Shown one piece after another: positions 12,297 to 28,296 of a stretch of DNA of 64,000 nt. This DNA comes from Macrostomum lignano (taxonomy: Eukaryota). The DNA lies in assembly GCA_002269645.1 (NCBI GenBank), contig NIVC01002544.1:62001-126000 (forward strand). Direction: 5' to 3'. A model generated the notes under the pieces. That model worked only from the letters and a program-made list of their open reading frames with translations, did not search any database and was not told the origin of the DNA. The stretch's first letter is position 1; every line of letters starts with the position of its first letter. A program made the position numbers and the translations under genes.

Positions 12297-12476
12297 CTTA
12301 GTCTTCTTTAGAACATGCGGTGCCTGTTCATTACTTTCAAGCAGTTGTTTCTTCTTCTGTTTTTCCTTTTTAGCCTCATTCTCTTTTTTCATTTCATCCA
12401 GGAGATTGGCAGCAACAATCTTAGTTTTCCCCTTTTTCTTGTCCTTCTTTGCAAAAAAGTCATCGAGATCACCCAT
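12297..12476 (-). CDS. CDV3: CDV3 homologue, exon 1
   Basis: MGDLDDFFAKKDKKKGK is the CDV3 N-terminal signature (LD.FFAK.DKKK); 60 codons then donor AAG|GTATGT. Joined protein is 302 aa. Confidence 0.85.
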
Positions 12477-14244
12477 CTTGCTTTTGCAATTGCAGACAAA
12501 GAAAAAGTAAAGTAATTTTAACCCCGGCACGAAGTGCTACGAGGCACGAAAAGAACAAGATAAGGCTTTAAATGTGTTACCAGAAGAGGCTTTTACTTTG
12601 CTCGTGGTGGTGCAAGTTCAAGAGCCTTTGCGGTCATTTAAATAATATGAACGGCCGGGTTAGAAACAAAAACATACTAAAACAAATACAAAAGTGTTTT
12701 TACCTATTTATAAGAAAGTATAATCTTGTTTTTACTACTTAATTAAAAAAACAATTTCACTTTCAATAACTTTATTTTGAATTTACTAGAAATGTAAGCT
12801 TGAACTATTTTCGTTTTTCGTTTTCACCTTCCTCGCACGTGGCCTGCGACGACTATAGCAGTGAACACTGTATTCCAAGTATAGTTACACAAATTTTGTT
12901 TCAAGTTGTCGTTTTGAACATTAGTTCAACGGCTGGACTTTTTACAGCAATGCTTTGATACGCTTAATGACAGTGTAATACTTTTTACTTTCAAGTTTTA
13001 ATACATCTAGATCCATTTGCATTAATGTCTGGATATTATATTAGGATAATCTGATACGTGTCATGATAGTGATACCTACTATATATATTGCGTTAGATTA
13101 GAAAACCAAAAATAAATCAATGTTATAATTTTGATTCTTACACAAACGCATTGATTTTAGTATTGTTTTTATGTTTTACTGCATGTTAGGAATATTTAAC
13201 TATAGGCCTATTAGTATTATAAATGCTACTAAGCTGCTACTTTCTCAACTAGGAAAGGGCTGGGTACACTGGAGAGCTCGAAAATAATCATCTCAGAGCA
13301 AGATAGTTCAGGAATCATTGAAAAAATAATTTAACAAACAAAACTTGAAGATTGCCTATAAATATAGTATAGTTGAGGTAAGGTTAGAGATTGCAAAATC
13401 CTGGTTTTTTGCGATCCTGGGATCCCAGGATTTAATCCCAATATTTAGCCAATCCTGGGATCAGAAAAATACAAATTTTTAAGCTTTTAGGTTAAAATTT
13501 TAAAGCAAAATGTGCACTAAACATATTTTTGCTTCCATTTTTGATTGTTATAAAGAGAAAGATCCTTTTGTAGATGAAAAACAATATTATCTTGTGGTGT
13601 ATTTAAGTAAGTAGCATAAAAGTACTATTTAAAGTCTAGTAAGCCAAAATGATGCAAGTAAGGGTAGCAGAGTTAGATAGCCCTAAATAAGAGGCAAGTG
13701 CATAGGGTCAGAACACCCTTAGATAGACATTAGCCCCTTTACCACCAAGTTGAATATTTGTGGTGGGCTTTATCTATTTAATGTACAATGCCTCAAGAGA
13801 GACAACTTTATACTTTGAATAACTCTGATTAATACTCTGGCAATTACAATCAATAATTTCAAATTTATTAGCATATCTAACTTTAGCGCATTGGTTGCTA
13901 TATTTTATGAGATTAAGTTGATATAATAGTCACTAATCATTGATAGAAGTGTCTATCGCCCAAGTGTCTTGTTGCCAAAGTGACTAGTAGCCTCCCAAGC
14001 CAAGTTCAATATTTGTCACTTTGCCAAACCCAGCAGCCAGGTTCCTAGTGTCACTGTGGGCAGAATTGAATGATGCATCATTTGTGTACATAGGTCACTC
14101 GAGCTCCACTTTATGAGCTTAAGTTGACAGACCCTTTTTTGTAAGGTAGGATGCAAAGGCGCTCTGCTCTTCCTTCAAGTTTCAATTACTCCCTTTGCGC
14201 TGAGGTTTTGCTATAAATTGCAAAAAAATTCGATTCAATGTCAA

Positions 14245-14315
14245 GCATCGGTGGTTCAGTGGTAGAATGCTCGCCTGCCACGCGGGCGGCCCGGGTTCGT
14301 TTCCCGGCCGATGCA
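14245..14315 (+). tRNA. tRNA-Gly (GCC), copy 3, T-loop variant
   Basis: Same as copies 1 and 2 except GTTCGTTTCC (A to T at 14300, the A58/B-box position); T5 terminator at 14318-14322. Confidence 0.9.
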
Positions 14316-14704
14316 ACTTTTTAAAATATAAAGTCAAACGTTTTTTTCCAAAAAGTATTTTTTTGGATTCGTTAATAAATTTATAGATTTAAATTTTAGC
14401 ATAAACAAGCATACAAACAAATATTAGAGATCTATTATATTTAGATTTTTTGGAGTATTTGGGAATTAGGCTTTTTTATTTAAGGCTCTGGTATTGCCAT
14501 ATGCAACATTAGTCCCATTAAATAGTTTTTTTCTAGAATCTAATGCTTCTACTAACTAGAACTAGCATATATTGGGCTTGATCTATCTATTAGTAATAAC
14601 TAATAGAAAAATAGCCTAGTATTTTAACGCAAAACTACTTACAGCAGCCGAATCAGTTTTCCGATATGTATCGAAAAAATGCTTTGTAAATCTTAAATTT
14701 TCAG

Positions 14705-17700
14705 AAGGTATTCAGCTACGCTTCGTATTTTTCGGTCAGCAATTTCGGCGACCGGTCCAGCGGCAAGCAATTCGAAATTCCTGAGTCGCAACGCCACGAT
14801 GCAAACATTGGTCGCGCTCTCAGCGAGGTGGGCATTGACCCCCTCTATTCGGTGTTTTTCGATCTGCTGCCGAATCGACCTCGCCACTCAGTCAGCGACA
14901 AACCGTCGCCTTGCGATTGGTGGCTCTGCTTCAGCGCCCACCTCGGCAAGTTCTGCGACTTCCCCAATCGGTGGAAGTCTCTCATTCAGCAGGTGCTGGG
15001 CAAGAACCCATCGCTATTGATGTACGTAGCCCAGCAGGTTATGGTGATGCTTCTCGATGAGAAGTACGGCTTCGACTTTGACGAGACTTACCCGTCCAGG
15101 CCGTTCTGGTTCTTCATCTACGGCCTGCTGCTGCTGGATGAGCATGAGTGAGTGCCAACCTTAGGCGAGACCCTGCGGCCTTCAGCGATGTTAATCTTAA
15201 TGATGACCCTTACAATATTTATCCCAATCCCCATCCTCATGATATTTATCCGAATCCCCATCCTCAGGATATTTATCCAAATCCCCATCCTCAGGATATT
15301 TATCCAAATCCCCATCCTCAGGATATTTATCCCAATCCCCATCCTCAGGATATTTATCCAAATTCCCATCCTTAGAATATTCATCCAAATCCCCATCCTC
15401 AGGATATTTATCCAAATCCCCATCCTCAGGATATTTATCCAAATTCCCATCCTTAGAATATTCATCCAAATCCCCATCCTCAGGATATTTATCCCAATCC
15501 CCATCCTCAGGATATTTATCCCAATCCCCATCCTCAGGATATTGATCCCAAACCCCCAGCTCAGACTATTTATCCCAATCCCCATCCTCAGGATATTGAT
15601 CCCAATTCCCATCCTCAGGATATTTCTCTCACTCAGAGAATCCCCCACTCAATCTCCCACTCAGAGAAAGCTAATGCTTATCCCACAAACTGCCATCCCC
15701 AGGCTGGCCGGCTCCACCACGGCTGCCGACGGCGCCGCTAGCTGCCTGAGCCTGGCGGCCTCCACGCGCAGCAGCGGCGACATCCCAGCCGGGGTGAAGC
15801 GCCTCCACACGCTGTTGCACCGGCGCTACCTGGCTGGCCGCAAGCGGCGCCTTTCGCCCGACGTCTCCGTTGACTATCGCGCCGTCAGCAAGCGCCGCTG
15901 GAGCGAGTTCAAGCCGTGGTACCAGGAGCGCCAGCGCCAGCTGTTGCAGCTGACTGCGTCGCACCGCTCCGAAGGCAGCGGCGACTCGACTCCGCGTAGA
16001 TGCGTTGGCGCCAGCTTCCTCCAAACTTTCCTAGAAATTGTGCTAGCGAACGAGCCGCTCCGCCTGAAGCTGGACAAGGCGCTGTGCCGCCTGCCTTTGG
16101 ATGAGTTCAGCAACTGCTTGAACAGCTGCCTGTCGCAGACTGTGCACTGGAAGCAGCTCATGTGTCAGGACGGCTTTGCCCGGCTGGCCCGGCTCTCCTG
16201 GGAGCCGCCGCACACAGCCATTGGGTGCGTGCAGCTGCAGCCCATTAGTTAGTCAGCTGCAGCCCATTAGTTAGTCAGCTGCAGCCCATTAGTTAGTCAG
16301 CTGTAGCCCATTAGTTAGTCAGCTGTAGCCCATTAGTCAGCTGTAGTCCATTAGTTAGTCAGCTGCAGCCTATTAGTTAGTCAGCTGTAGCCCATTAGTT
16401 AGTTAGCTGTAGTGCATTAGTTAGTCAGCTGTAGCCCATTAGTTAGTCAGCTGCCGCCCATTAGTTAGTCAGCTGCCGCCCATTAGTTAGTAATGTTATG
16501 CAACATTGTTCCTGTCTCCCCGCAGGGTTTTCCCCACTATCCCGTCCCTGGACGCTGAGCCGAGGCAGCAACAGCAGCGGCGGCCGAAGCAGGCGGAGCT
16601 CCATTGTCTGCGGCTGCTGGCGAACGATTCTCGAGCAGTTTTCTGCGAGTTCACGAATAATACGGACAAGGACTATGTGAGCTATCGTTGCAACTTTATG
16701 CGTAAATAACCAGTTTCGGGTTTCTATGCGGAATTATTTGACAAAGTTTTCGCCTGCCCGAACCCGACAGAACGTGATGGCGTTCAGCTCCGAGTGGGAG
16801 GCCCTGGCCATGGCCTGGTACTTGCAGCGGCACCGGCTGCTGGCTGTTAGCTTCAGCCAGTCCATGCTGGAGCCTGACGGGGCCCTGGAGAGCCGGCTGC
16901 TGCTGCCCAAACTGCTGCAGCTCTACAGGCCTGTGCTAGGAATGTGAGTGGTTTAGATGTCACCCGTGCTGTGCAGGTGCTAATTAGCCCTGATAAGGGT
17001 GTATCACCTTCAGCCAGTGTGAGTGAGTGCAGGTGCTAATTATCCCTGATAAGGGTGTGTCACTCAGGCCAGTGTGAGTGAGTGCAGGTGCTAATTATCC
17101 CTGATAAGGGTGTGTCACTCAGGCCAGTGTGAGTGAGTGTGGGTGCTAATTAGCCCTGATAAGGGTGTATCACCTTCAGCCAGTGTGAGTGAGTGCAGGT
17201 GCTAATTAGCCCTGATAAGGGTGTATCACCTTCAGCCAGTGTGAGTGAGTGCAGGTGCTAATTAGCTCTGATAAGGGTGGGTCACCCATGCCAATCCCCA
17301 ACCCTCTCGCAGAGCTCCGTTCATCCCAGGCAGAGGCCCCGACCCAGAGCAGCAGTGCGAGTTCAACCTGCAGCTCACAGCATTCAACTGCTCAGATCCT
17401 GAGCAGCCCCGCCTGACACTGTCGGACCCGTCTGACGGCAACAAAGCCCACCAGGTGGGCTGGATGGCGGACCCAACCCTGGCGGCCAGGGCCAGCTGCG
17501 GCCGTCTGCTGCAGGGCCTGCTGTCCGACGTGCTGCCCATGGACGGCTTTGCGGTCCGGCCGGACACCCTGCCGGTGCTGAAGCCCAACGAGTTCCAGGT
17601 GCTCACTGACAACCATCACGAGAACCGACAAGGTCAGCGACCCACTTCTTTATTTTTGTCTTCCTATTTTCACATTTCTTAACTTCTCCAATTTAAACGA

Positions 17701-20700
17701 AAATTGCCAAAATGCACTCTAAACAGTTGTGAGGATCAGCCTCACAATCAACAAGTTTCACCTGCCTAGCCGGCTTGTGCTCAAGCGAATTCCGTCGGTA
17801 AGCTGCGAAAGTTGCTTGGAAATCAATTTAACTTTGTGATTTGTGTACTGTGTGTAATCTGTGCGCGGGTAATTGAAGCATGAGCAGGGGAGATGGGATT
17901 ATGAGCAGGGGAGATGGGATTATGAGCAGGGGAGATGGGATCATGAGCAGGGGAGATGGGATCATGAGCAGGGGAGATGGGATCATGAGCAGGGGAGATG
18001 GGATCATGAGCAGAGGAGATGGGATCATGAGCAGGGGAGATGGGATCATGAGCAGGGGAGATGGGATCATGAGCAGGGGAGATGGGATCATGAGCAGGGG
18101 AAATGGATCATGAGCAGGGGAGATGGGATCATGAGCAGAGGAGATGGGATCATGAGCAGGGGAAATGGATCATGAGCAGGGGAGATAGGATCACGAAAGA
18201 ACGGGGCTGTAATTCCATAAGATATATTTGCCTTTGAACTCCCCGCCTTCCTCCCCGGAGTTCAATAACTTCGCGAAGACGCGGCGCCTGATGTCCCTCG
18301 CCAGCCAGTCCTGCCGCCTGAACTGCGCTCACATCAACCCGGTGCTGGCGCTCACCCTGGAGCCTGAGTTTGGCATCATCTCGGAGCTGCGACTCGCCTC
18401 CTGTGCCACTCTGCTCGCCAGCAGGCAGCGCAAAGTTCACTTCACTGTTGCTCACCTGGTCAGCATGCTCAGGCAGTGTCTCAGCGCACTCCTGTACCTG
18501 CTCAGGCAGACCTGTGTAAGTGGCGCTTATAGGACTCCTTCATTGGGGTGTACAGGAGTGCATTTGTGTTCATTGGGGTGTACAGAGTGCATTTGTGTTC
18601 ATTGGGGTGTACAGAGTGCATTTGTGTTCATTGGGGTGTACAGAGTGCATTTGTGTTCATTGGGGTGTACAGAGTGCATTTGTGTTCATTGGGGTGTACA
18701 GAGTGCATTTGTGCTCATTGGGGTGTACAGAGTGCATTTGTGTTCATTGGGGTGTACAGAGTGCATTTGTGCTCATTGGGGTGTACAGGAGTGCATTGGT
18801 GCTCATTGGGGTGTACAGGAGTGCATTGGTGCTCATTGGGGTGTACAGGAGTGCATTGGTGCTCATTGGGGTGTACAGGAGTGTATTGGTGTTCATTGTG
18901 GTGCACATGAACGCATTGAACTCTGCAGTCGGACAGTAGGCACCACAACAACATCAAGCTGTCGAACATCTTGATCGACTACCTGGACTCTAACGCCATT
19001 AATGTCCGGCTGTGCGACCTTGCTTGTCCGGCTTCGACGCAGGAGTCTGTTGCCAACGACTTGAACAAGCTGCACCACTGCTTGTACGATGAACTGCTGT
19101 GCAATGATAGTCATGGAGAGGCGAGTGCCTGCAGCGAATGCAACCTACTGCTGCCAGTGATGCGGCTGGTCAAGGCAAAGGCTGCTCCGCAGGGCAACGA
19201 GGAGGCCTGTCTGCTCGAGCTGATTGCGGAGACCAATGCTCTGGATAAGACAAGTGAGCGCTGGTTGAGCGTGTTGGGTAGGCAGTGAGCATGTTGGGTA
19301 GGCAGTGAGCATGTTGGGTAGGCAGTGAGTCAGATACGTTTCGCTGAGTAGTAGGCAGTGAGGATGTTGGGTAGGCAGTGAGTCAGATACGTTTCGCTGA
19401 GTAGTAGGCAGTGAGGATGTTGGGTAGGCAGTGAGTCAGATACGTTTCGCTGAGTAGTAGGCAGTGAGCATGTTGGGTAGGCAGTGAGTCAGATACGTTT
19501 CGCTGAGTAGTAGGCAGTGAGCATGTTGGGTAGGCAGTGAGCATGTTGGGTAGGCAGTGAGTCAGATACGTTCCACTGAGTAGTAGGCAGTGAGCATGTT
19601 GGGTAGGCAATGAGCATGTTGGGTAGGCAGTGAGCATGTTGGGTAGGCAGTGAGCATGTTGGGTAGGCAGTGAGCATGTTGGGTAGGCAGTGAGCATGTT
19701 GGGTATGCAGTGAGTCAGATACGTTCCGCTGAGTAGTAGGCAGTGAGGATGTTGGGTAGGCAGTGAGGATGTTGGGTAGGCAGTGAGCATGTTGGGTAGG
19801 CAGTGAGCGTGTTGGGTAGGCAGTGAGCATGTTGGGTAGGCAGTGAGCATGTTGGGTAGGCAGTGAGCATGTTGGGTAGGCAGTGAGCATGTTGGGTAGG
19901 CAGTGAGCATGTTGGATAGGCAGTGAGCATGTTGGATAGGCAGTGAGCGTGTTGGGTAGGCAGTGAGCATGTTGGGTAGGCAGTGAGCGTGTTGGGTAGG
20001 CAGTGAGCGTGTTGGGTAGGCAGTGAGCGTGTTGGGTAGGCAGTGAGCATGTTGGGTAGGCAGTGAGCATGTTGGGTAGGCAGTGAGTCATACGGTACGC
20101 TGAGCAGTAGGCAGTAAGCAAGCTGTATATGTACAGACAACCAAATTGCAAACCTTGTGCCTTCAGAGATTCGTGAAGTCCTCCATCACCCTGTGCTTCC
20201 CGTGGGCTGTTCGCTGCCTCTGCCCAGCGAGTCCGATGGCCAGTGCCTGGGCGTGTCCGAGATCCCGCAGCACCTGCAGTTCAATCCGTCCGATCTGCTG
20301 CTCACCGGCGAAAAGCTGGGCTCCGGCTGCTTTGGCTCCGTAGTGCGCGGCTCCCTGCAGCTCAACGGCCGCAGGGTCAGCGTGGCCGTCAAGACACTCC
20401 GCAGCGACGCCTCCAACAGCCAATTCGTCAAGGAGGTCCTCACGCAGGCGAGTCTGCCGAAGCACGAGAATATACTGGAACTGCTGAAGGTTTCGGAGGG
20501 TGAGTGAGTGGGTGAGTGAGTGAGTGGGTGAGTGAGTGAGTTGGTGAGTGGGTGAGTGAGTGAGTTGGTGTGTGGGTGAGTGAGTGAGTTGGTGAGTGGG
20601 TGAGTGAGTGAGTTGGTGTGTGGGTGAGTGAGTGAGTTGGACTGGTTTGTGCGGCGAAAGTGCACAAACCGGCTTTAGTGCCCAGCGCGTTGATTGTACA

Positions 20701-23700
20701 TCGCCACCTGCCCCCCCCCCTTGGGTGGCAGGGGTGTTTTTAAACCCCCGTCGCGCTCTTCTGGCGGCTCACTTTGCCTTCTCGCAGTGAATTTTTTTGA
20801 CTTAGAAATAGAAACTTTTGCTGAGTCATGAACCGCACCCGTAGCCAGTCAGCCGATTCCGTCCCCACAACTGTGCCAGCACTGCGAGGGAAACTAAAGG
20901 AGCTTGGTTTGCCAACCTCTGGCAACAAAGCAAAACTAGTCCAAAGGCTTCGCGCCCATATTCAAGACGTGGAGACCTCTGTCGAGAGTGACGAGCTGAC
21001 GAACGTTCAGGCCATTCTGCGAGCTACAGGGCAGAACTCGGCGGTAGCGAGCAGCGGGGGCAGCCCCCCAAATCGGCGACAGGTCGAGAACGGTGGGTCT
21101 GGCGCGGCTGGCGGCCTGGACGAACAGCTGCTGGAGGCGGAGAAGCGAATCCGTCTGCTGAAGCTGCGCAAAGAAGAAGCGCAGCTGGAATCCGAGTTCG
21201 CGCAGCTACGGGTCGGCCGTTCTGAGGCACGTGATGTACCGGGTGAGTTGCTAAATTGCCTAACTGGATGTGTGCAGCATGAAGTTGGGCAGCAGCATGA
21301 GAACATGGGAGCCTCAGGGAGAAGTACCAGTAGCGTCTACCGAATCGTTGACTTCGTCAGCAAGCGCAAGCAGTGTCTTCTAGGCCAGAGTAAGTCTAAA
21401 GAAGTGGCGGTCGAGGCGCTGTCGTTAGGCGATTGGGTGACGGGCAATGCGCAGGCGATGCTTCAGATGCTGACTGACGGGCGTCTAGTCAGACTGGATC
21501 AGCATGGTCGATTGGATGTGGCAGAGCTCAGAGACTATCTCAGGTACACCGCACGCATTGGCGAGTTGTTGGACCTGGGCTTCGACAAGAGCCGTGTGAT
21601 GAGATTTGATGACGAGTGCCGGCTCAGCCAAACGTCTGATGGCAAGTGGGAGTCGCACAGCTCGGACCTGAGTCTGGTTGCGGCGTACCTCATGGCTCCC
21701 CAGAAGCAGCAATCGGGGGGTGGTGCCCAGAAGCGCAATCAACTGGTTTGCTTCGACTACAACAGGATACGCGGGTGCGAACGCAAGAGCTGTCGGTTCC
21801 TGCATCGCTGCCGAAGATGCGGCCTGGCGCACTCTGAGGCAGCCTTCCACCGCGACGAATCGAGCGGTGAGGAGAAACCGCAACACTGACTCGATCATAG
21901 CGCGAATTTTATTCCTCCTGTTTTATCCTCTGATCTCAATCTGGCCCAGTGGCAGGCGGAGTTGTCCAAGCTGGATCTCCCGCCCGGTCGGATGGCTTTT
22001 ATCCTTGATGGCGTTGCTAGTGGCTTTCGCATCACCAATCGTCAGATGCATGGCAACGAGCTGGTTGAAGTGGCAAACTACTCATCGGTTTTTAAGCACC
22101 ATGACAGAGTTGCGCGTCAGATTGCTAATGAGCTTCGTCTCGGTCGTTATCGTCTCTGTGCTGCTGGTGACAAACCTTGCATAGTCAGCGCCCTTGGTGC
22201 GCTGCCGAAGTCCAACGGTGGCGTTCGCTTAATCCATGACTGCAGCCGGCCGCAAGGTAAGTCTGTCAACTCCGCTTACGAGAGCGAGCAGAGACTGCGT
22301 TTCACCTGTGTCCAGAACTTTGCTAAGAGGCTTAAGAAGAATTACTTTATGTGCAAGGTCGATCTAAGCGAAGCCTATCGTTCATGTGGGATCCATCCTG
22401 ACGACCAAAAGTTTACCGGTTTGAAGTTTCGGCTAGGTAGCGATGCTTGCGACACCTACATGGTGGACACGCGCCTGCCATTTGGTGCTGCTGCTTCCGT
22501 CACGGCTTTCTATCATCTCAGCGAGGCGGTCAAGTTGATGATGGTGCACCGCGGCTTCGTCAATACTGAGGCCTATCTGGACGATTTTGCCTTTTGCGGT
22601 TTGCAAAACGAGTGCGAGGCCTTCTTTAATGTGTTGACGTCGCTGATGACCAGACTGGGCTTCACCGTGAATTGGACGAAGTGTCAGCAGCCTTCGCAAA
22701 GGATGACGTTTCTCGGTGTGGAGCTCGACACCGTCAAGGGCCTGAAGCGGCTTTCAGACGAGAAAGTGGAGAAACTTTTAGAGCAACTGGACGATGCTGC
22801 TGCCAAGGATCGCATCAGCAAGCAAAGTTTACAGCAGATCATCGGCAGGCTGGTGTGGGCTTCGCAGGTGATCGAATGCGGTCGCCCCTTTCTTCAGGAC
22901 CTGATTTCGCGCTCTAACAATTTGGCCGTCGGTCAGCAAGATGAGGTGGATGCGGCCCTGCGTAGTCAGCTGCGCTGGTGGAAGTGTGCTCTGCTAGCTC
23001 AAAGGTGGAAGACTCTCTGGTTCAATGGCGACTTCGATGCCGCGATCGAGTCGGACGCCTGCCTGGTGGGCGGCGCTGCCGTGCTGCGGTTGCCGGGGGG
23101 CGTGAGTGACTGGCGCTACGTTAATTGGGATCTCGACGCGGATGCTGTTTTTCGGGATCTGCCTATCAATTACAAGGAGGCTGCGATACCTCTGATGGCG
23201 TTGCTGTCGTGGCGGGACCGCCTGCACAACTGTCGGCTGTGCATCTACTGCGATAATATGGCAGCGTGCTGTATTATCAACAATGGGGTCTCCAAGTGCC
23301 CTCTGGTGTTGAGGCTGTTGCAGACGGTGGCGCTGCTTTGCATTCGTCAGAACATTCAGCTGCGTGCTTACCATGTGCCAGGGCCGTTTCAAATTTTTGC
23401 TGACGCCGCGTCTCGGCTGCACGAGGGCAGTCAGTTGTTGAATTTTTTGCTGCGCTTTTATGGCTCATTGATGCGTCTCACCAATTGCTCGCTTTCCCGG
23501 CACACGCTTTCTGCTGCCACATCCGCTTTTCTCCGTTTTCAGGTCGCCAGACTGCGCCAGACCACCTCAGCCACCGAGCCCGTGAACTACTCGGTTCCTC
23601 CTACGCGGCCCGCTCGAAAAGCGCCATCAGCTCACACGTGCGGTCCTGGCGCGCGTACTGCTCAGCCAAGGGACTCGACCCCGCCGGGTGTACTGTGTCC

Positions 23701-26700
23701 ACGCTGCTAAACTACCTGGCTGGCCTCACGGGCACGCGCCTGCGAGCCTACAGTAGCGTTCGCGGTCATGTCAGCTCGCTTTCACTGTGGTTTCGGCTGA
23801 ACGGCGCTCAGGACCTGACGAAGCACACCCTCACCCAGCATCTGCTGCGGGGCTGCAAGCGAGCGCTGGGGCTTCAGGTCAACCAGAAGCTACCAATGTC
23901 TCCGTCGGTGCTGCAAAAGCTTTGGTCTCTGGTTGACAAGGGCGACAATCGGCAACTGGCCTGCTGGGCGGTCACCATCACTGCCTGGTGGGGAATGCTG
24001 CGAAAATCATCACTCCTTCTATCGTCGCCTCAGTTGGGTAGTGGGATGAAGGTGCAGAATCTGACACCTCACCGTTGCGGCCTCCTCTTAAGCGTGGACT
24101 TTGGCAAGACTATTCAGTTCCGTGATCGAGTCCACCACGTCCTGCTTCCGAAGTTCCCCGCCTGCCCCGCGCTCTGCCCGGTAGTGGCGATTCGCCGACA
24201 TCTGTGTGTCAACAAGCTGGCGATGGCCGAGGCGCCACTCTGGTCCTTCATCGATCGCAATGGACAGCGGCGCCATCTAGCTGCTCGGGACTTGGACCGG
24301 TTTCTTGACTCTAAGCTGCAGAGGGCTGGGTGTGGCGGCAAGCTCTACTCGGCTCACAGCCTGCGTCAAGGTGGAGCCACCTGGGCAGCTCGCATGGGCC
24401 TGCCGGTGGCGGAGATCCAGCGGATCGGCGACTGGAAGAGTTCGGCGGTGGAGCGCTACTTGCCCCGCTCGGGTGTTGCCACTGCTGCGGCCTCTCTGCA
24501 TTTTTCTTCCGCCCTTAGTGCTCATTTTTGACGGTGGTCTTCCCGCTGATTTGTTTTTTGCTCAATGCCTAGCTGCTGCTCTTATCCCCCGTTGTGTTTG
24601 GCTTTGGAGGCCTGCTTCGTTTCTGTGCCAAGTTCGTGTTTTAATTGCCTTTGTTGCTGGAAGCACTAATGGACTGGTTTGTGCGGCGAAAGTGCACAAA
24701 CCGGCTTTAGTGCCCAGCGCGTTGATTGTACATCGCCACCTGCCCCCCCCTTGGGTGGCAGGGGTGTTTTTAAACCCCCGTCGCGCTCTACTGGCGGCTC
24801 ACTTTGCCTTCTCGCAGTGAATTTTTTTTTCTTTTTCGTGTTAAGTTTGCTTTAAGCCAAATATACTCGTAGATTGAAGTTCGAAACACTTTTTTATTGA
24901 CGGAGGCCTGCTTCGTTTCTGTGCCAAGTTCGTGTTTTAATTGCCTTTGTTGCTGGAAGCACTAATGGTGCGTGGGTGAGTGAGTGAGTTGGTGAGTGGG
25001 TGAGTGAGTGAGTTGGTGAGTGGGTGAGTGAGTGAGTTGGTGAGTGGGTGAGTGAGTGAGTTGGTGCGTGGGTGAGTGAGTGAGTTGGTGTGTGGGTGAG
25101 TGAGTGAGTTGGTGCGTGGGTGAGTGAGTGAGTTGGTGCGTGGGTGAGTGAGTGAGTTGGTGAGTGGGTGAGTGAGTGAGTTGGTGAGTGGGTGAGTGAG
25201 TGAGTGAGTTGGTGAGTGAGTGAGTGAGTTGGTGAGTGGGTGAGTGAGTGAGTTGGTGCGTGGGTGAGTGAGTGAGTTGGTGTGTGGGGGAGTGGGTGTG
25301 TGGGTGAGTGAGTGAGTTGGTGTGTGGGTGAGTGAGTGAGTGTGTGGGTGAGTGAGTGAGTTGGTGTGTGGGTGAGTGAGTGAGTTGGTGTGTGGGTGAG
25401 TGAGTGTGTGGGTGAGTGAGTGAGTTGGTGTGTGGGTGAGTGAGTGAGTGAGTGAGTGAGTGGGTGAGTGAGTTGGTGTGTGGGTGAGTGAGTGAGTGTG
25501 TGGGTGAGTGAGTGAGTGAGTGGGTGAGTGAGTTGGTGTGTGGGTGAGTGAGTGAGTGTGTGGGTGAGTGAGTGAGTGGGTGAGTGAGTTGGTGTGTGGG
25601 TGAGTGAGTGAGTTGATGAGTGGGTGAGTGGGTGAGTTGGTGAGTGAGTGAGTTGGTGCGTGGGTGAGTGAGTGAGTGAGTGCGTGTGTGAGTTAGTGCG
25701 TGTGTGGGTGAGTGAGTTGAGTGGGTGTGTGGGTGAGTGAGTGCGTGTGTGAGTTAGTGCGTGTGTGGGTGAGTGAGTTGAGTGGGTGTGTGGGTGAGTG
25801 AGTGCGTGTGTGAGTTAGTGCGTGTGTGGGTGAGTGAGTGAGTGAGTGGGTGAGTGACATGCTTGGGCGCAACCTAGGGATTCACCCGGCCGTTTCTGTT
25901 GGCAACACACGCATGTAAGTCGCTATTGGACGGAATAGTAGTCACGTGACTGCTCTCAGCCAATAGCGACTTACATGTGTGTGTTGCCAATAGAAACGGC
26001 CGAGTGATTCCCAAGGTTGCGCATGTATGTCAGAGTGAGTGAGTATTCCCAGCAAGCAGCAGCGCCATCCAACACCTGCCCCCAGGTGAGCAGCAGCTCA
26101 TCACTCCTTACATGGAGATGGCGCTGGACAAATACCTGGCCAGCCACCGCTCCGAGCTGTGCAGTCCTAACGGCCGGGCACTCGACTTTCTGCGCCAGAT
26201 TGCCAGTGTGAGCCGCTTGGAAGATCGATTTTGGAGTGGGAATAGCCGCATAGGGATATGGAGAAGTAGAATCCCAAAGCTTTTAAGGGATTAGCTGATA
26301 CCTTTTCATAATTTGATCAGCTCTGCATGATAAATTAGACATTAGCAGGGATTTATGAGCACAGATAGTGGATAGATGAGGGATTAACACATATTAGCGA
26401 TTAAAATAAATAGATTCGGAACTAATGCACATAGATAAGGCATTTAACATCGATAGATTAGGCATTGACATGGATAGATTAGGCATTAACATGGATAGAT
26501 TAGGCATCAACATGGATAGATTAGGCATTTGACATGGATATATTAGGCATCAACATGGATAGATTAGGGATTAGCACGAATAGATTAGGTATTTGACATG
26601 GATAGATTAGGCATTAACATGGATAGATTAGGCATTTGACATGGATAGATTAGGCATTTGACATGGATATATTAGGCATCAACATGGATAGATTAGGCAT

Positions 26701-28296
26701 TTAACATGGATAGATTAGGTATTTGACATGGATAGATTAGGCATTTAACATGGATAGATTAGGCATCAACATGGATAGATTAGGCATCAACATGGATAGA
26801 TTAGGCATCAACATGGATAGATTAGGCATTTAACATGGATAGATTAGGTATTTGACATGGATAGATTAGGCATTTAACATGGATAGATTAGGTATTTGAC
26901 ATGGATAGATTAGGCATTAACATGGATAGATTAGGCATTTGACATGGATAGATTAGGCATTTGACATGGATATATTAGGCATCAACATGGATAGATTAGG
27001 CATTTAACATGGATAGATTAGGTATTTGACATGGATAGATTAGGCATTTAACATGGATAGATTAGGCATCAACATGGATAGATTAGGCATCAACATGGAT
27101 AGATTAGGCATTTAACATGGATAGATTAGGTATTTGACATGGATAGATTAGGCATTTAACATGGATAGATTAGGTATTTGACATGGATAGATTAGGCATC
27201 AACATGGATAGATTAGGCATTTAACATGGATAGATTAGGTATTTGACATGGATAGATTAGGCATTTAACATGGATAGATTAGGCATTTAACATGGATAGA
27301 TTAGGTATTTGACATGGATAGATTAGGCATTAACATGGATAGATTAGGCATTTGACATGGATAGATTAGGCATTTGACATGGATAGATTAGGCATTAACA
27401 TGGATAGATTAGGGATTAGCACGGATAGATTAGATATTAGCACGGATAGATTAGAGATTAGGATGGATAGATTAGGGATTAGCATGGATAGATTAGTGAT
27501 TAACACGGATAGATTAGGGATAAACACGGATAGATTAGGGATTAACACGGATAGATTAGGGATTAACACGTATAGATTAGAGATTAGCATGGATAGATTA
27601 GGGATTAACACGGATAGATTAGGGATTAACACGGATAGATTAGAGATTAGCATGGATAGATTAGGGATACAGATGGATTAGCAAGCATAGGCCGGCACAA
27701 GAGACGCAGAGCATGTGAACCCCCGTCGACTGCAGGGCATGAGGTTTCTTTCCGATTACGGAGTGTTCCACTGCGACCTGGCTGCCCGCAACGTGCTGAT
27801 GGAGAACCTGAGCCCCGGGCCGCCCAGGCTGAAGATTGGCGACTTCGGTCTGTCCGGGATGTTTCAGAAGCGAGCTGATGCCGAGTACCTGTATTACACC
27901 TTGCCGAAGGACAACCGAAAGTTCCCCATGTACATCCTGCCGCCCACGGACTTGCAGACTAAGATCTACCCAACCACAGACAGCTGGAGCTTCGGCACCC
28001 TCATATGGGAGATGTTCAGCCATATTCCAGTGCTGGAGGCATTCTACGTCAACCCTTCCAGGGACAATGGACCCTTGCATCTGGTCGAGTACGTGAAAAA
28101 GAAGCCGCAGAAGTACCTGCTGCCATTAGATTCGGTGCCGCCACGTCTGCAGGGCCTGGTGCAGCGCTGCTGGGAGCCAGACCATGTTGCCAGAATCAGC
28201 CTGCAGGACATCTACAGTTTCCTGCATAACGATGTGCAGGCAATCTTTACTGAGCCGAACGGCATTGAGAAGAGTTCAACACGGCAGATAGACTAA
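14705..28296 (+). CDS. JAK-like tyrosine kinase (FERM-like, SH2-like, pseudokinase, kinase); 11 exons, start codon not located
   Basis: GT-AG exons 14705-15147, 15703-16224, 16526-16676, 16771-16943, 17313-17632, 17727-17797, 18222-18515, 18929-19253, 20167-20499, 26086-26207, 27736-28296; every junction is phase-compatible, about 1104 aa. Motifs: VGIDPLYSVFFDL, LLMYVAQQ and FSSEWEALAMAWYL resemble JAK FERM; pseudokinase HNNIKLSNIL...LCDLA; kinase GSGCFG, VAVK, HCDLAARN, DFG, EYLYY. Confidence 0.75.
15235..15660. repeat. 27-bp minisatellite (JAK intron 1)
   Basis: Unit AGGATATTTATCCCAATCCCCATCCTC, about 15 copies. Confidence 0.9.
16232..16490. repeat. 22-bp minisatellite (JAK intron 2)
   Basis: Unit GCAGCCCATTAGTTAGTCAGCT, about 11 copies, starting just after the donor. 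Confidence 0.9.
16974..17283. repeat. 56-bp minisatellite (JAK intron 4)
   Basis: Unit CAGGTGCTAATTAGCCCTGATAAGGGTGTATCACCTTCAGCCAGTGTGAGTGAGTG, about 5.5 copies. Confidence 0.9.
17878..18190. repeat. 21-bp minisatellite (JAK intron 6)
   Basis: Unit CATGAGCAGGGGAGATGGGAT, about 14 copies. Confidence 0.9.
18540..18900. repeat. 29/30-bp minisatellite (JAK intron 7)
   Basis: Unit CATTGGGGTGTACAGAGTGCATTTGTGTT, about 12 copies. Confidence 0.9.
19265..20090. repeat. 20-bp minisatellite with 33-bp variant units (JAK intron 8)
   Basis: Unit GTGAGCATGTTGGGTAGGCA interspersed with GTGAGTCAGATACGTTTCGCTGAGTAGTAGGCA. Confidence 0.9.
20167..20499 (+). CDS. Tyrosine kinase N-lobe exon
   Basis: KLGSGCFGSVVRG...VAVKTLR...FVKEV...HENILELL; donor G|GTGAGT at 20499/20500. 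Confidence 0.9.
20828..21889 (+). CDS. Ngaro ORF1 (gag-like) with N-terminal SAP domain and C-terminal Cys/His zinc finger
   Basis: TVPALRGKLKELGLPTSGNKAKLVQRL is a SAP motif; CFDYN...C...C.F.H.C..CG..H at the C-terminus. Confidence 0.85.
   Translation: MNRTRSQSADSVPTTVPALRGKLKELGLPTSGNKAKLVQRLRAHIQDVETSVESDELTNVQAILRATGQNSAVASSGGSPPNRRQVENGGSGAAGGLDEQLLEAEKRIRLLKLRKEEAQLESEFAQLRVGRSEARDVPGELLNCLTGCVQHEVGQQHENMGASGRSTSSVYRIVDFVSKRKQCLLGQSKSKEVAVEALSLGDWVTGNAQAMLQMLTDGRLVRLDQHGRLDVAELRDYLRYTARIGELLDLGFDKSRVMRFDDECRLSQTSDGKWESHSSDLSLVAAYLMAPQKQQSGGGAQKRNQLVCFDYNRIRGCERKSCRFLHRCRRCGLAHSEAAFHRDESSGEEKPQH
21890..23710 (+). CDS. Ngaro ORF2: reverse transcriptase and RNase H
   Basis: LIHDCS, KVDLSEAY, LPFG, YLDD, FLGVELD; RNase H SDAC...E...CDN...ADAASR. 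The frame is open from 21890, directly after the gag TGA and in the same frame. Confidence 0.92.
   Translation, partial: LDHSANFIPPVLSSDLNLAQWQAELSKLDLPPGRMAFILDGVASGFRITNRQMHGNELVEVANYSSVFKHHDRVARQIANELRLGRYRLCAAGDKPCIVSALGALPKSNGGVRLIHDCSRPQGKSVNSAYESEQRLRFTCVQNFAKRLKKNYFMCKVDLSEAYRSCGIHPDDQKFTGLKFRLGSDACDTYMVDTRLPFGAAASVTAFYHLSEAVKLMMVHRGFVNTEAYLDDFAFCGLQNECEAFFNVLTSLMTRLGFTVNWTKCQQPSQRMTFLGVELDTVKGLKRLSDEKVEKLLEQLDDAAAKDRISKQSLQQIIGRLVWASQVIECGRPFLQDLISRSNNLAVGQQDEVDAALRSQLRWWKCALLAQRWKTLWFNGDFDAAIESDACLVGGAAVLRLPGGVSDWRYVNWDLDADAVFRDLPINYKEAAIPLMALLSWRDRLHNCRLCIYCDNMAACCIINNGVSKCPLVLRLLQTVALLCIRQNIQLRAYHVPGPFQIFADAASRLHEGSQLLNFLLRFYGSLMRLTNCSLSRHTLSAATSAFLRFQVARLRQTTSATEPVNYSVPPTRPARKAPSAHTCGPGARTAQPRDSTPPGVLCPRC
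23485..24531 (+). CDS. Ngaro ORF3: tyrosine recombinase
   Basis: Catalytic signature MLRKS, GKT, HSLRQGGAT, IGDWKS, RY; overlaps ORF2 by 226 nt; no ATG near the 5' end. Confidence 0.92.
   Translation: MLAFPAHAFCCHIRFSPFSGRQTAPDHLSHRARELLGSSYAARSKSAISSHVRSWRAYCSAKGLDPAGCTVSTLLNYLAGLTGTRLRAYSSVRGHVSSLSLWFRLNGAQDLTKHTLTQHLLRGCKRALGLQVNQKLPMSPSVLQKLWSLVDKGDNRQLACWAVTITAWWGMLRKSSLLLSSPQLGSGMKVQNLTPHRCGLLLSVDFGKTIQFRDRVHHVLLPKFPACPALCPVVAIRRHLCVNKLAMAEAPLWSFIDRNGQRRHLAARDLDRFLDSKLQRAGCGGKLYSAHSLRQGGATWAARMGLPVAEIQRIGDWKSSAVERYLPRSGVATAAASLHFSSALSAHF
25867..26022. mobile_element. 156-bp hairpin MITE-like element
   Basis: 63-bp inverted arms with about 5 mismatches (GCGCAACC...GCTATTGG and CCAATAGC...GGTTGCGC) around a 30-bp spacer containing palindrome AGTCACGTGACT; TSD not resolved. 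Confidence 0.65.
26452..27680. repeat. 20/21-bp minisatellite (JAK intron 10)
   Basis: Unit CATGGATAGATTAGGCATT(T)AA/GA, about 58 copies. Confidence 0.92.
27736..28296 (+). CDS. Tyrosine kinase C-lobe exon (last exon)
   Basis: GMRFL...HCDLAARNVL...LKIGDFGLS...DSWSFGTLIWEMFS...CW...R; stop at 28296. Confidence 0.92.
   Translation, partial: GMRFLSDYGVFHCDLAARNVLMENLSPGPPRLKIGDFGLSGMFQKRADAEYLYYTLPKDNRKFPMYILPPTDLQTKIYPTTDSWSFGTLIWEMFSHIPVLEAFYVNPSRDNGPLHLVEYVKKKPQKYLLPLDSVPPRLQGLVQRCWEPDHVARISLQDIYSFLHNDVQAIFTEPNGIEKSSTRQID

What the first reader, a model, noticed from the sequence alone, without database searches (positions are those of the whole stretch)
14705..28296. Highly divergent but complete JAK-type kinase hidden in repeat-filled introns
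Seen: 11 phase-compatible exons (about 1104 aa) with a pseudokinase directly before an active-looking tyrosine kinase. The pseudokinase has the catalytic Asp replaced by Asn (HNN) and the kinase activation loop has tandem tyrosines (EYLYY). Established: FERM-SH2-pseudokinase(HGN)-kinase(YY) order defines Janus kinases; N-terminal segments resemble JAK2 GITPVY..MFAL and SSLREALSF as I recall them. Oddities: HCD instead of HRD, the APE motif reads LPP, and no in-frame ATG precedes the acceptor at 14704 (unseen upstream exon or SL trans-splicing). The ORF track alone shows only fragments.
Basis: partly seen in the sequence, partly recalled or inferred. Interest (0 to 1): 0.75.

Follow-up and report, generated by a model that had tools for sequence, protein, structure and literature searches.

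The report
Very divergent JAK-like kinase gene
An intact 11-exon gene in a probable Macrostomum-type flatworm genome encodes a tyrosine kinase preceded by a JAK-style pseudokinase; it looks like an extremely diverged Janus kinase, a family reported as undetected in flatworms, but its receptor-binding FERM and SH2 parts could not be confirmed.

Summary
Eleven GT-AG, phase-compatible exons (14705-28296, + strand) give one 1123-aa reading frame. Every exon has GC3 of 0.71-0.85. All the quoted motifs are present: HNN, HCD, DFG, EYLYY, LPP, and no ATG before the first acceptor.

The JAK reading is partly supported.

For it:
- Residues 601-714 score 32-33 bits on a JAK-JH2-only HMM, but about 0-4 bits on JH1 or non-JAK tyrosine-kinase HMMs. 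The best of 300 shuffles scored 0.5.
- Both kinase-domain introns match JAK introns in position and phase. They are absent from Srms, Met-like and ACK control genes.
- Weak colinear F1 (P about 0.02) and F3 (P about 0.04) matches fall at the expected places.

Against it:
- Pfam, PDB and a 35-sequence JAK profile find no FERM or SH2. The N-terminus scores -3.4 bits, against 194-406 for real JAKs, fly hopscotch included.
- The kinase domain has no JAK-specific signal (145 vs 144 bits) and scores about half what a normal tyrosine kinase scores.

A neighbouring lectin ORF has a single database relative, from Macrostomum lignano. That fits the 37-nt intron and a spliced leader ending in AUG, which would supply the missing start codon.

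Verdict: a real gene, most likely a hyper-divergent JAK derivative. Not shown to be a complete JAK.

The parts
14705..15147 (+). Exon 1 (aa 1-147, ends in phase 2). It starts at the acceptor ttaaattttcag|AAG with no upstream in-frame ATG, and is the candidate SL trans-splice acceptor. It holds the weak FERM-F1-like motif at aa 16-54 (14750-14866, ...IGRALSEVGIDPLYSVFFDL).
   Evidence: GC3 is 0.73. Region-restricted hhalign F1 match: score 18.4 against a shuffle mean of 11.2 +/- 2.4, with 1 of 120 shuffles reaching it. Pfam and PDB give no hit. The acceptor fits the Macrostomum trans-splice motif [T/C]TNCAG (PMC8629364).
15703..16224 (+). Exon 2 (aa 148-321, phase 2 to phase 2). Orphan sequence where JAK F2 would lie. 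No detectable similarity.
   Evidence: GC3 is 0.85. hhalign F2 test: 48 of 120 shuffles reach the real score.
16526..16676 (+). Exon 3 (aa 322-372). First half of the weak FERM-F3-like match (..VFCEFTNNTDKDY). It is followed by a 37-nt GT-AG intron (16677-16713).
   Evidence: GC3 is 0.73, and the intron is 0.41 GC. F3 hhalign match covers aa 354-409 (16620-16824), with 4 of 120 shuffles reaching it.
16714..16943 (+). Exon 4 (aa 373-448, ends in phase 2). Second half of the F3-like match (..AFSSEWEALAMAWYL). It ends ..LYRPVLG^^I. This is the candidate counterpart of the universal JAK 'CHGPI^^' phase-2 intron.
   Evidence: The CHGP[IV]^^ phase-2 intron is present in fish JAK1 P0177, crab JAK P0307 and starfish JAK P0276. 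The window intron lies about 4-5 aa from the extrapolated position, in the same phase (inference).
17313..17632 (+). Exon 5 (aa 449-555, ends in phase 1). It sits where the SH2 domain and the SH2-JH2 linker would be, but is about 40 aa shorter than in JAKs. No detectable SH2 similarity.
   Evidence: hhalign SH2 test: 118 of 120 shuffles reach the real score. AlphaFold2 on the single sequence gave pLDDT 46.8, which is uninformative.
17727..17797 (+). Exon 6 (aa 556-579; 71 nt; phase 1 to phase 0). Probable JH2 beta2-beta3, with a retained Lys in RLVLKRI (17771-17791).
   Evidence: GC3 is 0.71. MAFFT aligns LVLKRIPS with the JAK JH2 segment VVLKVLGS.
18222..18515 (+). Exon 7 (aa 580-677). JH2 alphaC, hinge and alphaE. 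The JH2-specific HMM match starts at aa 601 (18285).
   Evidence: The JH2 HMM gives 31.8 bits over aa 601-714, and the best of 300 shuffles is 0.5 bits.
18929..19253 (+). Exon 8 (aa 678-785, ends in phase 1). JH2 catalytic-loop equivalent HHNNIKLSNIL (HNN at 18944-18952), VRLCDLACP in place of DFG / 'KLSDPG', and a shortened C-lobe.
   Evidence: Crab JAK P0307 has the same HHNNIRCHNIL motif. The intron before this exon is phase 0, close to the vertebrate JH2 intron SYL|EDKKLVHG.
20167..20499 (+). Exon 9 (aa 786-896). JH2-JH1 linker and kinase N-lobe: G-loop GSGCFG (20319-20342) and VAVK (20382-20393). The phase-1 donor sits at the start of a (GTGAGTGR)n array.
   Evidence: Pfam PK_Tyr hit. The intron after this exon coincides (+2 alignment columns, same phase) with the vertebrate JAK beta4/beta5 intron.
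26086..26207 (+). Exon 10 (aa 897-937). Kinase beta5, hinge and alphaD-alphaE. It ends ..LRQIAS| in phase 0.
   Evidence: The intron falls in exactly the same alignment column and phase as '|GMxYL' in fish JAK1, fish JAK1-like and crab JAK. It is absent from Srms, Met-like and ACK genes.
27736..28296 (+). Exon 11 (aa 938-1123 plus the TAA stop). Kinase C-lobe: HCDLAARN (27769-27792), DFG (27841-27849), activation loop EYLYY (27883-27897), YILPP for W-x-APE (27931-27945), and a 7-aa insert at the JAK alphaF-alphaG insertion site.
20638..24833 (+). DIRS-like retroelement lodged in intron 9. It is not part of the coding gene but explains the 5.6-kb intron. It carries a SAP-domain gag, an RT and a tyrosine recombinase, flanked by 166-nt direct repeats.

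Best explanation
This is a real, intact, spliced gene for a cytoplasmic tyrosine kinase descended from the Janus-kinase family, diverged further than any JAK in the comparison set.

Shown:
- 11 coding exons form one 1123-aa frame.
- The C-terminal tyrosine-kinase domain keeps the catalytic set: G-loop, VAVK Lys, alphaC Glu, catalytic Asp in HCD, Asn, DFG, and tandem activation-loop tyrosines.
- It is directly preceded by a catalytically dead kinase-like domain (HNN) that is specifically JH2-like.

Inferred:
- The roughly 550-aa N-terminal region is a remodelled FERM. F1 and F3 traces remain, F2 is unrecognisable, and the SH2 segment is shrunken or lost.
- The protein would work as JAKs do. The N-terminal module would tether it to a membrane receptor tail. 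The pseudokinase would hold the kinase in check. Receptor dimerisation would allow trans-phosphorylation of the YY loop.
- HRD to HCD makes it a non-RD kinase, and the loss of APE suggests an altered activation segment and substrate docking.
- The genome is probably that of a Macrostomum-type flatworm. The missing start codon would then be supplied by SL trans-splicing onto the acceptor at 14704. The Macrostomum SL ends in ...TTGCATG and the exon is in phase 0, giving M-KVFSY...
For: - Gene reality: ORF, canonical splice sites, GC3 periodicity in all 11 exons; PK_Tyr E=5e-44.
- JH2: on a JAK-JH2-only HMM built from 35 diverse real JAKs, aa 601-714 score 31.8-32.9 bits. The same region gives no hit (-1.9) on the JH1 HMM and 3.1-4.2 bits on a non-JAK TK HMM, and the best of 300 shuffles is 0.5 bits. 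The HHNNI..NIL motif is shared with crab JAK P0307.
- Introns: the two kinase-domain introns coincide in position and phase with JAK introns. None of the kinase-domain introns of Srms, Met-like or ACK genes coincide. My rough chance estimate for 2 of 2 is about 1e-3. The JH2 intron before HHNN is close to the vertebrate JH2 intron, and the phase-2 intron after YRPVLG is close to the universal CHGPI^^ intron.
- FERM traces: F1 P about 0.017 and F3 P about 0.04, both at colinear positions.
- Order and spacing: the four matches fall at aa 16, 354, 601 and 812, against about 50, 358, 625 and 870 in fish JAK1.
- Other JAK-like features: a 7-aa insert at the JAK alphaF-alphaG site, and HCD also present in the JAK-like protein P0248.
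- Taxon and trans-splicing: the lectin ORF at 61849-62460(-) has a single relative, from Macrostomum lignano (E=2e-46, 50-56% identity). The SL sequence ending in ATG, the 30% of genes that are trans-spliced, and the [T/C]TNCAG acceptor motif come from PMC8629364. The acceptor here reads TTTCAG.
Against: - No FERM_F1, FERM_F2, Jak1_Phl or SH2 Pfam hit at E<=10.
- No PDB sequence hit for aa 1-823.
- The N-terminus scores -3.4 bits on a JAK N-terminal HMM, on which every real JAK tested, fly hopscotch included, scores 194-406 bits in leave-one-out tests.
- Global hhalign gives z=0.13.
- F2 and SH2 show no signal.
- The F1 and F3 P-values are marginal after correction for four tests.
- The kinase domain carries no JAK signal: 145.3 against 143.6 bits, where real JAKs gain +16 to +109 bits. 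The best PDB hits are Eph and MET.
- The JH2 match is only about 15% of a normal JH2 score and covers alphaC through the DFG-equivalent segment only.
- The '|GMxYL' intron also exists in EGFR. This is from my memory and was not checked here.
- Tandem-kinase proteins without FERM are common in the database.
- AlphaFold2 on single exons failed, with pLDDT of 40 and 47.
- The taxon rests on one lectin hit.
- There is no transcript evidence.
Confidence: 0.55

Rival explanations
1. A lineage-specific tandem-kinase protein that is not of JAK descent. The dead kinase-like domain arose from an independent duplication of a tyrosine-kinase domain, and the 550-aa N-terminus is a novel or unrelated module. 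The JAK resemblance is convergent or chance.
For: No FERM or SH2 was found by any profile. The kinase domain is equidistant from all TK families. Many proteins with 2-10 tandem TK domains and no FERM appear among the representatives.
Against: The dead domain prefers the JH2 HMM by about 29 bits over generic TK HMMs. A recent duplicate of a TK domain should show the opposite preference. There are JAK-type intron positions in both domains. Weak F1 and F3 matches fall at the colinear places. There is an insert at the JAK alphaF-alphaG site.
Confidence: 0.25
2. A decaying JAK pseudogene. The degenerate motifs, the missing ATG and the 37-nt 'intron' (really a frameshift) would reflect loss of function.
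For: HCD for HRD, LPP for APE, no start codon, and an HMM score about half of normal. There is an oddly short intron, and repeats and a retroelement sit in the introns.
Against: The reading frame of 3372 nt stays open across 11 exons, and all ten splice-site pairs are canonical and in phase. A strong GC3 excess appears in every exon, in the predicted frame. Sequence that had drifted neutrally far enough to erase FERM similarity would be full of stops and indels. The repeats and the retroelement are confined to introns.
Confidence: 0.08
3. Two adjacent genes joined by mistake: an orphan gene (exons 1-5) and a separate pseudokinase-kinase or kinase-only gene downstream.
For: There is no detectable homology in exons 1-5 and no transcript data. 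Trans-splicing organisms can have closely packed genes and operons (PMC8629364).
Against: All junctions are in phase, with no in-frame stop at any exon end. Exons 6 onward have no start codon of their own in a suitable position. Codon bias is uniform. The total length and the order of the weak matches mirror JAK.
Confidence: 0.07

Closest known systems
Invertebrate Janus kinases (Drosophila-type hopscotch, e.g. P0250 from Zeugodacus; crab JAK P0307; starfish JAK2-like P0276; Lingula JAK2 P0201)
   Same: Length is about 1100 aa. A dead pseudokinase sits directly before an active-type tyrosine kinase. HHNN in JH2 is identical to the crab JAK. There are YY residues in the activation loop. There is a short insert at the alphaF-alphaG site, as in P0276, P0248 and P0252. 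The '|GMxYL' phase-0 intron is shared, and probably the 'CHGPI^^' phase-2 intron. Weak F1 and F3 motifs lie at the same relative positions.
   Different: FERM and SH2 are not detectable: -3.4 bits against 194-406 bits for real JAKs. JH2 scores about 33 bits against 154-284. JH1 scores about 150 bits against 280-360, with no JAK-specific excess. HRD is replaced by HCD, and W-x-APE by YILPP. The SH2 and linker segment is about 40 aa shorter, and the JH2 C-lobe is shorter.
Vertebrate JAK1/JAK2 (fish JAK1 P0177; fish JAK1-like P0001)
   Same: Two further intron positions are shared only with the vertebrate genes: the beta4/beta5 phase-1 intron in JH1, and the 'SYL|ED..HG' phase-0 intron in JH2. 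The domain order is the same.
   Different: Vertebrate JH2 has HGN, and there is a long alphaF-alphaG insert. All four Pfam JAK modules are detected in P0177 (FERM_F1, FERM_F2, Jak1_Phl, SH2_1) and none in the window protein. The vertebrate gene has 23 introns against 10 here.
P0248, an unnamed JAK-like protein from a JGI metatranscriptome (FERM_F1 plus two kinase domains)
   Same: It has the same HRD-to-HCD change in the active kinase. It gives the best single JH1 match to the window protein among JAK-like sequences (89 bits). It has a 7-aa alphaF-alphaG insert.
   Different: P0248 still has a Pfam-detectable FERM_F1, an N-terminus scoring 225 bits and a JH2 scoring 195 bits on the leave-one-out JAK HMMs. 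Its organism is unknown.
Non-JAK tyrosine kinases nearest by raw similarity (Eph receptors, MET, ACK/TNK, Srms/FRK)
   Same: They are 28-35% identical in the kinase domain, with the same 85-89 bit range as the best JAK JH1 matches.
   Different: They have no preceding JH2-like domain and different kinase-domain intron positions (Srms, Met-like and ACK were checked). They have no alphaF-alphaG insert, and their N-terminal or extracellular modules are unrelated.

Membership tests
Janus kinase (JAK) family | C-terminal catalytically competent tyrosine-kinase domain (JH1) | tested here: met
   Pfam PK_Tyr_Ser-Thr E=5e-44 over aa 832-1100. The G-loop, VAVK, catalytic Asp (in HCD), Asn, DFG and YY are present. 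The domain is atypical: HCD for HRD, and LPP for APE.
Janus kinase (JAK) family | Pseudokinase domain (JH2) immediately N-terminal to JH1 | tested here: met
   A JAK-JH2-only HMM gives 31.8-32.9 bits at aa 601-714, colinear with JH2 in the full-length JAK HMM. The same region scores -1.9 to 4.2 bits on JH1 and non-JAK TK HMMs, and the best of 300 shuffles is 0.5 bits. The catalytic Asp is replaced by Asn (HHNN), as in crab JAK. The match is weak compared with real JAKs (154-284 bits) and covers only alphaC through the DFG-equivalent segment.
Janus kinase (JAK) family | N-terminal FERM domain (F1, F2, F3) | tested here: inconclusive
   No Pfam FERM_F1, FERM_F2 or Jak1_Phl hit at E<=10. No PDB hit. 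The JAK N-terminal HMM gives -3.4 bits against 194-406 for real JAKs. Global hhalign gives z=0.13. Region-restricted local hhalign finds weak colinear matches for F1 (1 of 120 shuffles) and F3 (4 of 120) but none for F2. AlphaFold2 on exon 1 alone gave pLDDT 40.
Janus kinase (JAK) family | SH2-like domain between FERM and JH2 | tested here: not met
   No Pfam SH2 or SH2_1 hit. The hhalign SH2/linker test gave 118 of 120 shuffles at or above the real score. The segment is about 40 aa shorter than in JAKs. AlphaFold2 on exon 5 gave pLDDT 47.
Janus kinase (JAK) family | JH1 groups with JAK JH1 rather than with other tyrosine-kinase families | tested here: not met
   The JAK-JH1 HMM gives 145.3 bits and the non-JAK TK HMM 143.6 bits. 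Real JAKs gain +16 to +109 bits in leave-one-out tests. The best PDB hits are Eph and MET, not JAK. The JAK1-like top hit is inflated because two of its domains match. No family is favoured, so this is an absence of signal rather than placement elsewhere.
Janus kinase (JAK) family | JAK-type gene structure (conserved intron positions and phases) | tested here: met
   '|GMxYL' phase 0 falls in the identical alignment column in fish JAK1, fish JAK1-like and crab JAK. The beta4/beta5 phase-1 intron lies within 2 columns of the vertebrate JAK intron. The JH2 phase-0 intron lies within 5 columns (beside a 4-aa insertion) of the vertebrate 'SYL|ED' intron. A phase-2 intron lies about 4-5 aa from the universal 'CHGPI^^' site. 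Srms, Met-like and ACK genes share none of the JH1 positions. The N-terminal correspondences depend on weak alignments.

The most novel reading that the evidence does not exclude
Flatworms, which are reported to lack detectable JAK and STAT, retain a cryptic Janus kinase. It has diverged so far that BLAST and Pfam surveys miss it: the FERM is barely traceable, the SH2 is lost or shrunken, and the kinase is of the non-RD type (HCD). It may therefore signal without a canonical STAT, and its start codon would be donated by the spliced leader.
Probability: 0.4. Interest if true: 0.7.

Novelty: new variant of a known kind. Interest (0 to 1): 0.55.

Why it matters
Surveys of JAK-STAT evolution report that JAK, and STAT too, are not detected in Platyhelminthes (PMC13203501). 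The Schistosoma mansoni tyrosine-kinase family table lists no JAK family (PMC3135232). If this locus is a flatworm JAK derivative, two things follow:

- The 'loss' is at least partly a detection failure caused by extreme divergence.
- It raises the question of what a JAK-type kinase does when the SH2 and possibly STAT are missing.

Macrostomum is an experimentally tractable regeneration and stem-cell model with RNAi and transgenesis, so the question could be tested directly.

The locus is also a practical warning. A conserved-architecture gene can be hidden from ORF- and similarity-based annotation by minisatellite-filled introns, a retroelement insertion, a 37-nt intron and a start codon that is not encoded at the locus.

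Tried and rejected
- Pfam on single exon translations: only the kinase exons hit.
- PDB phmmer with exon 1 and with aa 1-823: nothing relevant.
- Homology search with the spliced kinase domain: no orthologue among 5.8e9 proteins, and the best hits are 28-35% identical. The apparent 'JAK1-like best hit' (108 bits) is an artefact of two domains matching.
I therefore used the one exhaustive search on fish JAK1-like P0001 to collect 150 diverse JAK and TK representatives.
- AlphaFold2 on exon 1 and on exon 5 as single sequences gave pLDDT 40 and 47, which is unusable. I did not run fold search on these models because the matches would be meaningless.
- Global hhalign of the N-terminus against the JAK N-terminal alignment: z=0.13.
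- Search for an upstream ATG-containing first exon in 12400-14704: only a 3-codon candidate (13649-13657, MMQ|GTAAGG), which is unconvincing.
- Taxon identification: an exact look-up of the DIRS gag found nothing on record. The DIRS RT search gave only unnamed Logan and JGI contigs at up to 67% identity, and the first named hit was a coral at 35%. Rfam found only tRNAs. The Macrostomum lignano SL sequence is not in the window.
- Exon mapping of the starfish JAK was only partial because of N gaps. The Amphimedon Eph-like control gene was not on record.
- My first manual guess that exons 3-4 encode the SH2 (with 'PHTAI^^G' as the CHGPI intron) was dropped. MAFFT and hhalign place these exons on F3.
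- No tree was built. The sandbox has no ML phylogeny program, and the branch is very long, so I used an HMM competition instead.
Full report
**1. What is there**

The window is eukaryotic and very rich in repeats. TRF masks 28% of it as minisatellites. On the + strand between 14705 and 28296 I rebuilt a gene from the raw sequence. It has 11 exons:
- 14705-15147
- 15703-16224
- 16526-16676
- 16714-16943
- 17313-17632
- 17727-17797
- 18222-18515
- 18929-19253
- 20167-20499
- 26086-26207
- 27736-28296

Every intron is GT...AG and every junction is phase-compatible. The spliced frame is 3372 nt, or 1123 aa, ending in TAA.

The frames are not accidental. In the predicted frame each of the 11 exons has GC3 of 0.71-0.85, GC2 of 0.36-0.53, and introns of 0.34-0.56 GC. 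This holds even for the 71-nt exon 6 and for the two exons separated by an intron of only 37 nt. Eight of the ten introns contain a minisatellite array. Intron 9 (5.6 kb) also holds a DIRS-like retroelement with 166-nt direct terminal repeats and three open ORFs. No second copy of the gene lies in the window.

**2.

All are present at the coordinates:
- HHNN (aa 682-685) in the first kinase-like domain
- G-loop GSGCFG, VAVK, HCDLAARN, DFG, EYLYY and YILPP in the second

The frame upstream of exon 1 is closed by TAA at 14687-14689, and no ATG precedes the acceptor. A scan of 12400-14704 found no convincing ATG-bearing first exon.

**3. The kinase domain**

Pfam PK_Tyr_Ser-Thr matches aa 832-1100 at E=5e-44, so this is a tyrosine-kinase-type domain with a full catalytic set. 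It is, however, unusually divergent.
- Against 5.8e9 proteins the best matches are only 28-35% identical, and there is no orthologue.
- The top hit there, a fish 'JAK1-like' protein, scores high only because both of its kinase-like domains match the query.
- In the PDB the best hits are Eph receptors and MET at 85-89 bits. No JAK appears in the top 60.
- On a JH1 HMM built from 35 diverse genuine JAKs, ordinary non-JAK tyrosine kinases score about 270-330 bits, while this domain scores 154.
- In a competition between the JAK-JH1 HMM and a non-JAK TK HMM it scores 145.3 against 143.6. Every real JAK, left out in turn, prefers the JAK model by 16-109 bits.

By sequence, then, the kinase belongs to no identifiable family. 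Two smaller features do point to JAK:
- There is a 7-residue insert at the alphaF-alphaG site. This is where JAKs carry their family-specific insertion, and where ACK, Src-like, Eph-like, Met-like and Syk-like kinases have none.
- The same HRD-to-HCD change occurs in P0248, a JAK-like protein with a FERM_F1 domain from a metatranscriptome.

**4. The pseudokinase**

The exhaustive representative search, seeded with fish JAK1-like P0001, gave 150 sequences. From those with JAK-type N-termini I aligned 35 full-length JAKs. Identified members include fly hopscotch, tick hopscotch-like, crab, starfish JAK2-like, nemertean JAK2-like and fish JAK1.
- The full-length HMM hits the window protein twice, colinearly: JH1 at 154 bits, and HMM positions 532-642 (JH2) against aa 601-716 at 24.6 bits. 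The best of 200 shuffles was -1.8.
- A JH2-only HMM gives 31.8-32.9 bits over aa 601-714, from alphaC through the catalytic-loop and DFG equivalents.
- The same region gives no hit on the JH1 HMM and 3-4 bits on the non-JAK TK HMM. The best of 300 shuffles is 0.5 bits.
- The motif HHNNIKLSNIL is nearly identical to HHNNIRCHNIL in the crab JAK.

This is the strongest sequence argument for JAK descent. The dead domain resembles JH2 in particular, not kinases in general. The match is nevertheless only about 15% of what real JH2 domains score (154-284 bits).

**5. Gene structure**

I mapped exons exactly for fish JAK1-like P0001, fish JAK1 P0177 and crab JAK P0307. I mapped them partly for starfish JAK P0276. 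As controls I mapped fish Srms, a starfish Met-like kinase and an annelid ACK. The window protein was then added to the JAK alignment with MAFFT, which knows nothing about introns. Results:
- The last intron (..RQIAS|GMRFL, phase 0) falls in the identical column and phase as '|GMxYL' in all three mapped JAK genes.
- The preceding intron (..KVSE^G, phase 1) is within two columns of the vertebrate JAK beta4/beta5 intron.
- The intron before HHNN (phase 0) is within five columns, beside a 4-residue insertion, of the vertebrate JH2 intron 'SYL|EDKKLVHG'.
- None of the kinase-domain introns of Srms, Met-like or ACK coincide with the window's two.

My rough estimate for two of two JH1 introns matching a JAK1 intron within +/-2 residues and in phase is about 1e-3. 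One caveat, from memory and not checked here: EGFR also has the '|GMxYL' intron.

All three JAKs with N-terminal data share a phase-2 intron right after CHGP[IV]. Extrapolating from the F3 alignment, the window's phase-2 intron after ..LYRPVLG lies about 4-5 residues from that site. This is suggestive only, because it depends on a weak alignment.

**6. The N-terminal 550-600 residues**

Here the JAK reading is weakest.
- Pfam finds no FERM_F1, FERM_F2, Jak1_Phl, SH2 or SH2_1 at E<=10.
- PDB phmmer finds nothing.
- The 35-JAK HMM reports no domain, even at E<=1000 with filters off.
- A JAK N-terminal HMM gives -3.4 bits. Real JAKs left out of the model score 194-406, with hopscotch at 256.
- Global hhalign is indistinguishable from shuffles, z=0.13.
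AlphaFold2 on exon 1 and exon 5 alone gave pLDDT 40 and 47.

One positive signal comes from local hhalign. Over the whole N-terminus its single best alignment is aa 16-54 on the F1 segment with the consensus '..A..cgIsP.y..LFaL', at P=0.29. Four region-restricted tests, each with 120 shuffles, gave:

| Region | Shuffles reaching the real score |
|---|---|
| F1 | 1 of 120 |
| F3 (aa 354-409, ..FCEF...AFSSEWEALAMAWYL against 'c.f.di..isi....l.f.s...a.SfvSll') | 4 of 120 |
| F2 | 48 of 120 |
| SH2 / linker | 118 of 120 |

Fisher's combination of the four is about 0.04. The four matches lie in the JAK order with JAK-like spacing: aa 16, 354, 601 and 812, against about 50, 358, 625 and 870 in fish JAK1.

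I read this as a trace of FERM F1 and F3, no evidence for F2, and no evidence for an SH2. The segment where the SH2 and linker should lie is about 40 residues too short.

**7. Whose genome, and the missing ATG**

The DIRS reverse transcriptase found only unnamed contigs, at up to 67% identity. A composite query of neighbouring genes gave exactly one hit in 5.8e9 proteins. The lectin/PAN-like ORF at 61849-62460(-) matches a Macrostomum lignano C-type-lectin protein at E=2e-46, with 50-56% identity and a 16-residue identical run. This points to a macrostomid flatworm. It is probably not the annotated M. lignano proteome itself, since neither the kinase nor the DIRS proteins were found there.

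The assignment rests on one gene, but it fits three otherwise odd facts:
- the 37-nt intron;
- the repeat-rich genome of roughly 47% GC;
- the lack of a start codon.

On the last point, M. lignano trans-splices about 30% of its genes to a 35-nt leader that ends ...TTGCATG, at acceptors with the motif [T/C]TNCAG (PMC8629364). The exon-1 acceptor is TTTCAG and the exon starts in phase 0. SL addition would therefore create ATG|AAG GTA.., giving M-K-V-F-S-Y. This is inference; there are no transcript data.

**8. Comparison with what is known**

[quoted passage not shown] The S. mansoni TK family table lists no JAK family (PMC3135232). I found no paper that links Macrostomum to a Janus kinase.

Against the six defining features in the membership table:
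- met: JH1, JH2 (weakly) and JAK-type gene structure;
- inconclusive: FERM;
- not met: SH2 and 'JH1 groups with JAKs'.

I therefore do not file it as a complete JAK. I call it a JAK-derived, hyper-divergent variant.

**9. Verdict**

| Claim | Confidence |
|---|---|
| Real, intact gene for a pseudokinase-plus-kinase protein | about 0.9 |
| Of JAK descent | about 0.55 |
| Independent tandem-kinase protein | 0.25 |
| Pseudogene | 0.08 |
| Two genes mis-joined | 0.07 |

The decisive steps are a cDNA, orthologues from other macrostomids to build a profile, and a structure prediction of the full spliced protein.

Noticed in passing
window 20638-24833 (+), inside intron 9: An apparently intact DIRS-like retroelement. 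It carries a SAP-domain gag (20828-21889), an RT (21962-23710) and a tyrosine recombinase (23485-24531), bounded by 166-nt direct repeats that are 97-100% identical (20638-20803 and 24670-24833). A 67-nt internal segment (24606-24672) is repeated just outside the element at 24902-24968. It inserted into a (GTGAGTGR)n array, and the near-identical repeats and open ORFs suggest a recent insertion. Its closest relatives are unnamed metagenome and Logan contigs at up to 67% identity.
   Followed up: partly
window 15215-15625, 16232-16491, 16971-17279, 17879-18193, 18539-18903, 19266-20087, 20504-20640 + 24966-25857, 26431-27665: Eight of the 10 introns of the gene carry a minisatellite array with a period of 20-56 nt, often starting within a few bases of the donor. 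The intron-9 array is built of GTGAGT-like units and starts exactly at the donor, which offers many alternative 5' splice sites. Across the whole window, 28% of the sequence is tandem repeat.
   Followed up: partly
window 16677-16713: There is a 37-nt GT-AG intron between exons 3 and 4. It is required to keep the frame, and both flanking exons show frame-specific GC3 bias. This is very short for most animals, although very short introns are typical of flatworms (the latter from my memory).
   Followed up: partly
window 451-521, 1713-1783, 14245-14315 (+): There are three tRNA-Gly(GCC) genes. The first two are identical. The third has one T-loop substitution (GTTCGTTTCC instead of GTTCGATTCC) and lies 390 nt upstream of the exon-1 acceptor, inside the presumed outron or promoter region.
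   Followed up: no
window ~8373-12500 (-): A CDV3 (carnitine-deficiency-associated protein 3) homologue. The first exon begins MGDLDDFFAKKDKKK.. near 12.4 kb, and a GC-rich second exon (75% GC) lies at 8373-9100. Pfam CDV3 gives E=2e-9. It is divergently oriented to the kinase gene.
   Followed up: partly
window ~41000-64000, both strands; ORF 61849-62460 (-): There are repeated exon modules encoding Ig-like domains (..YTCK..) and a weak F5/8-type-C / galactose-binding-like domain (GGFHWFAV.L.EPV..RSVTV; Pfam E about 5e-4, below threshold). There is also a signal-peptide lectin/PAN-like ORF whose only relative among 5.8e9 proteins is a Macrostomum lignano C-type-lectin protein. This ORF is the only clue to the taxon.
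   Followed up: partly
P0248 (JGI metatranscriptome 3300030709, locus L007): This is a JAK-like protein of unknown organism (FERM_F1 plus two kinase domains). It carries the same HRD-to-HCD substitution as the window kinase, so non-RD JAK-type kinases exist elsewhere.
   Followed up: no
representative set (e.g. P0176, P0198, P0207, P0228): Many database proteins have 2-10 tandem tyrosine-kinase-like domains without JAK N-termini. They are either real multi-kinase proteins or fused gene models. Either way, a tandem kinase arrangement alone is not diagnostic of JAK.
   Followed up: no
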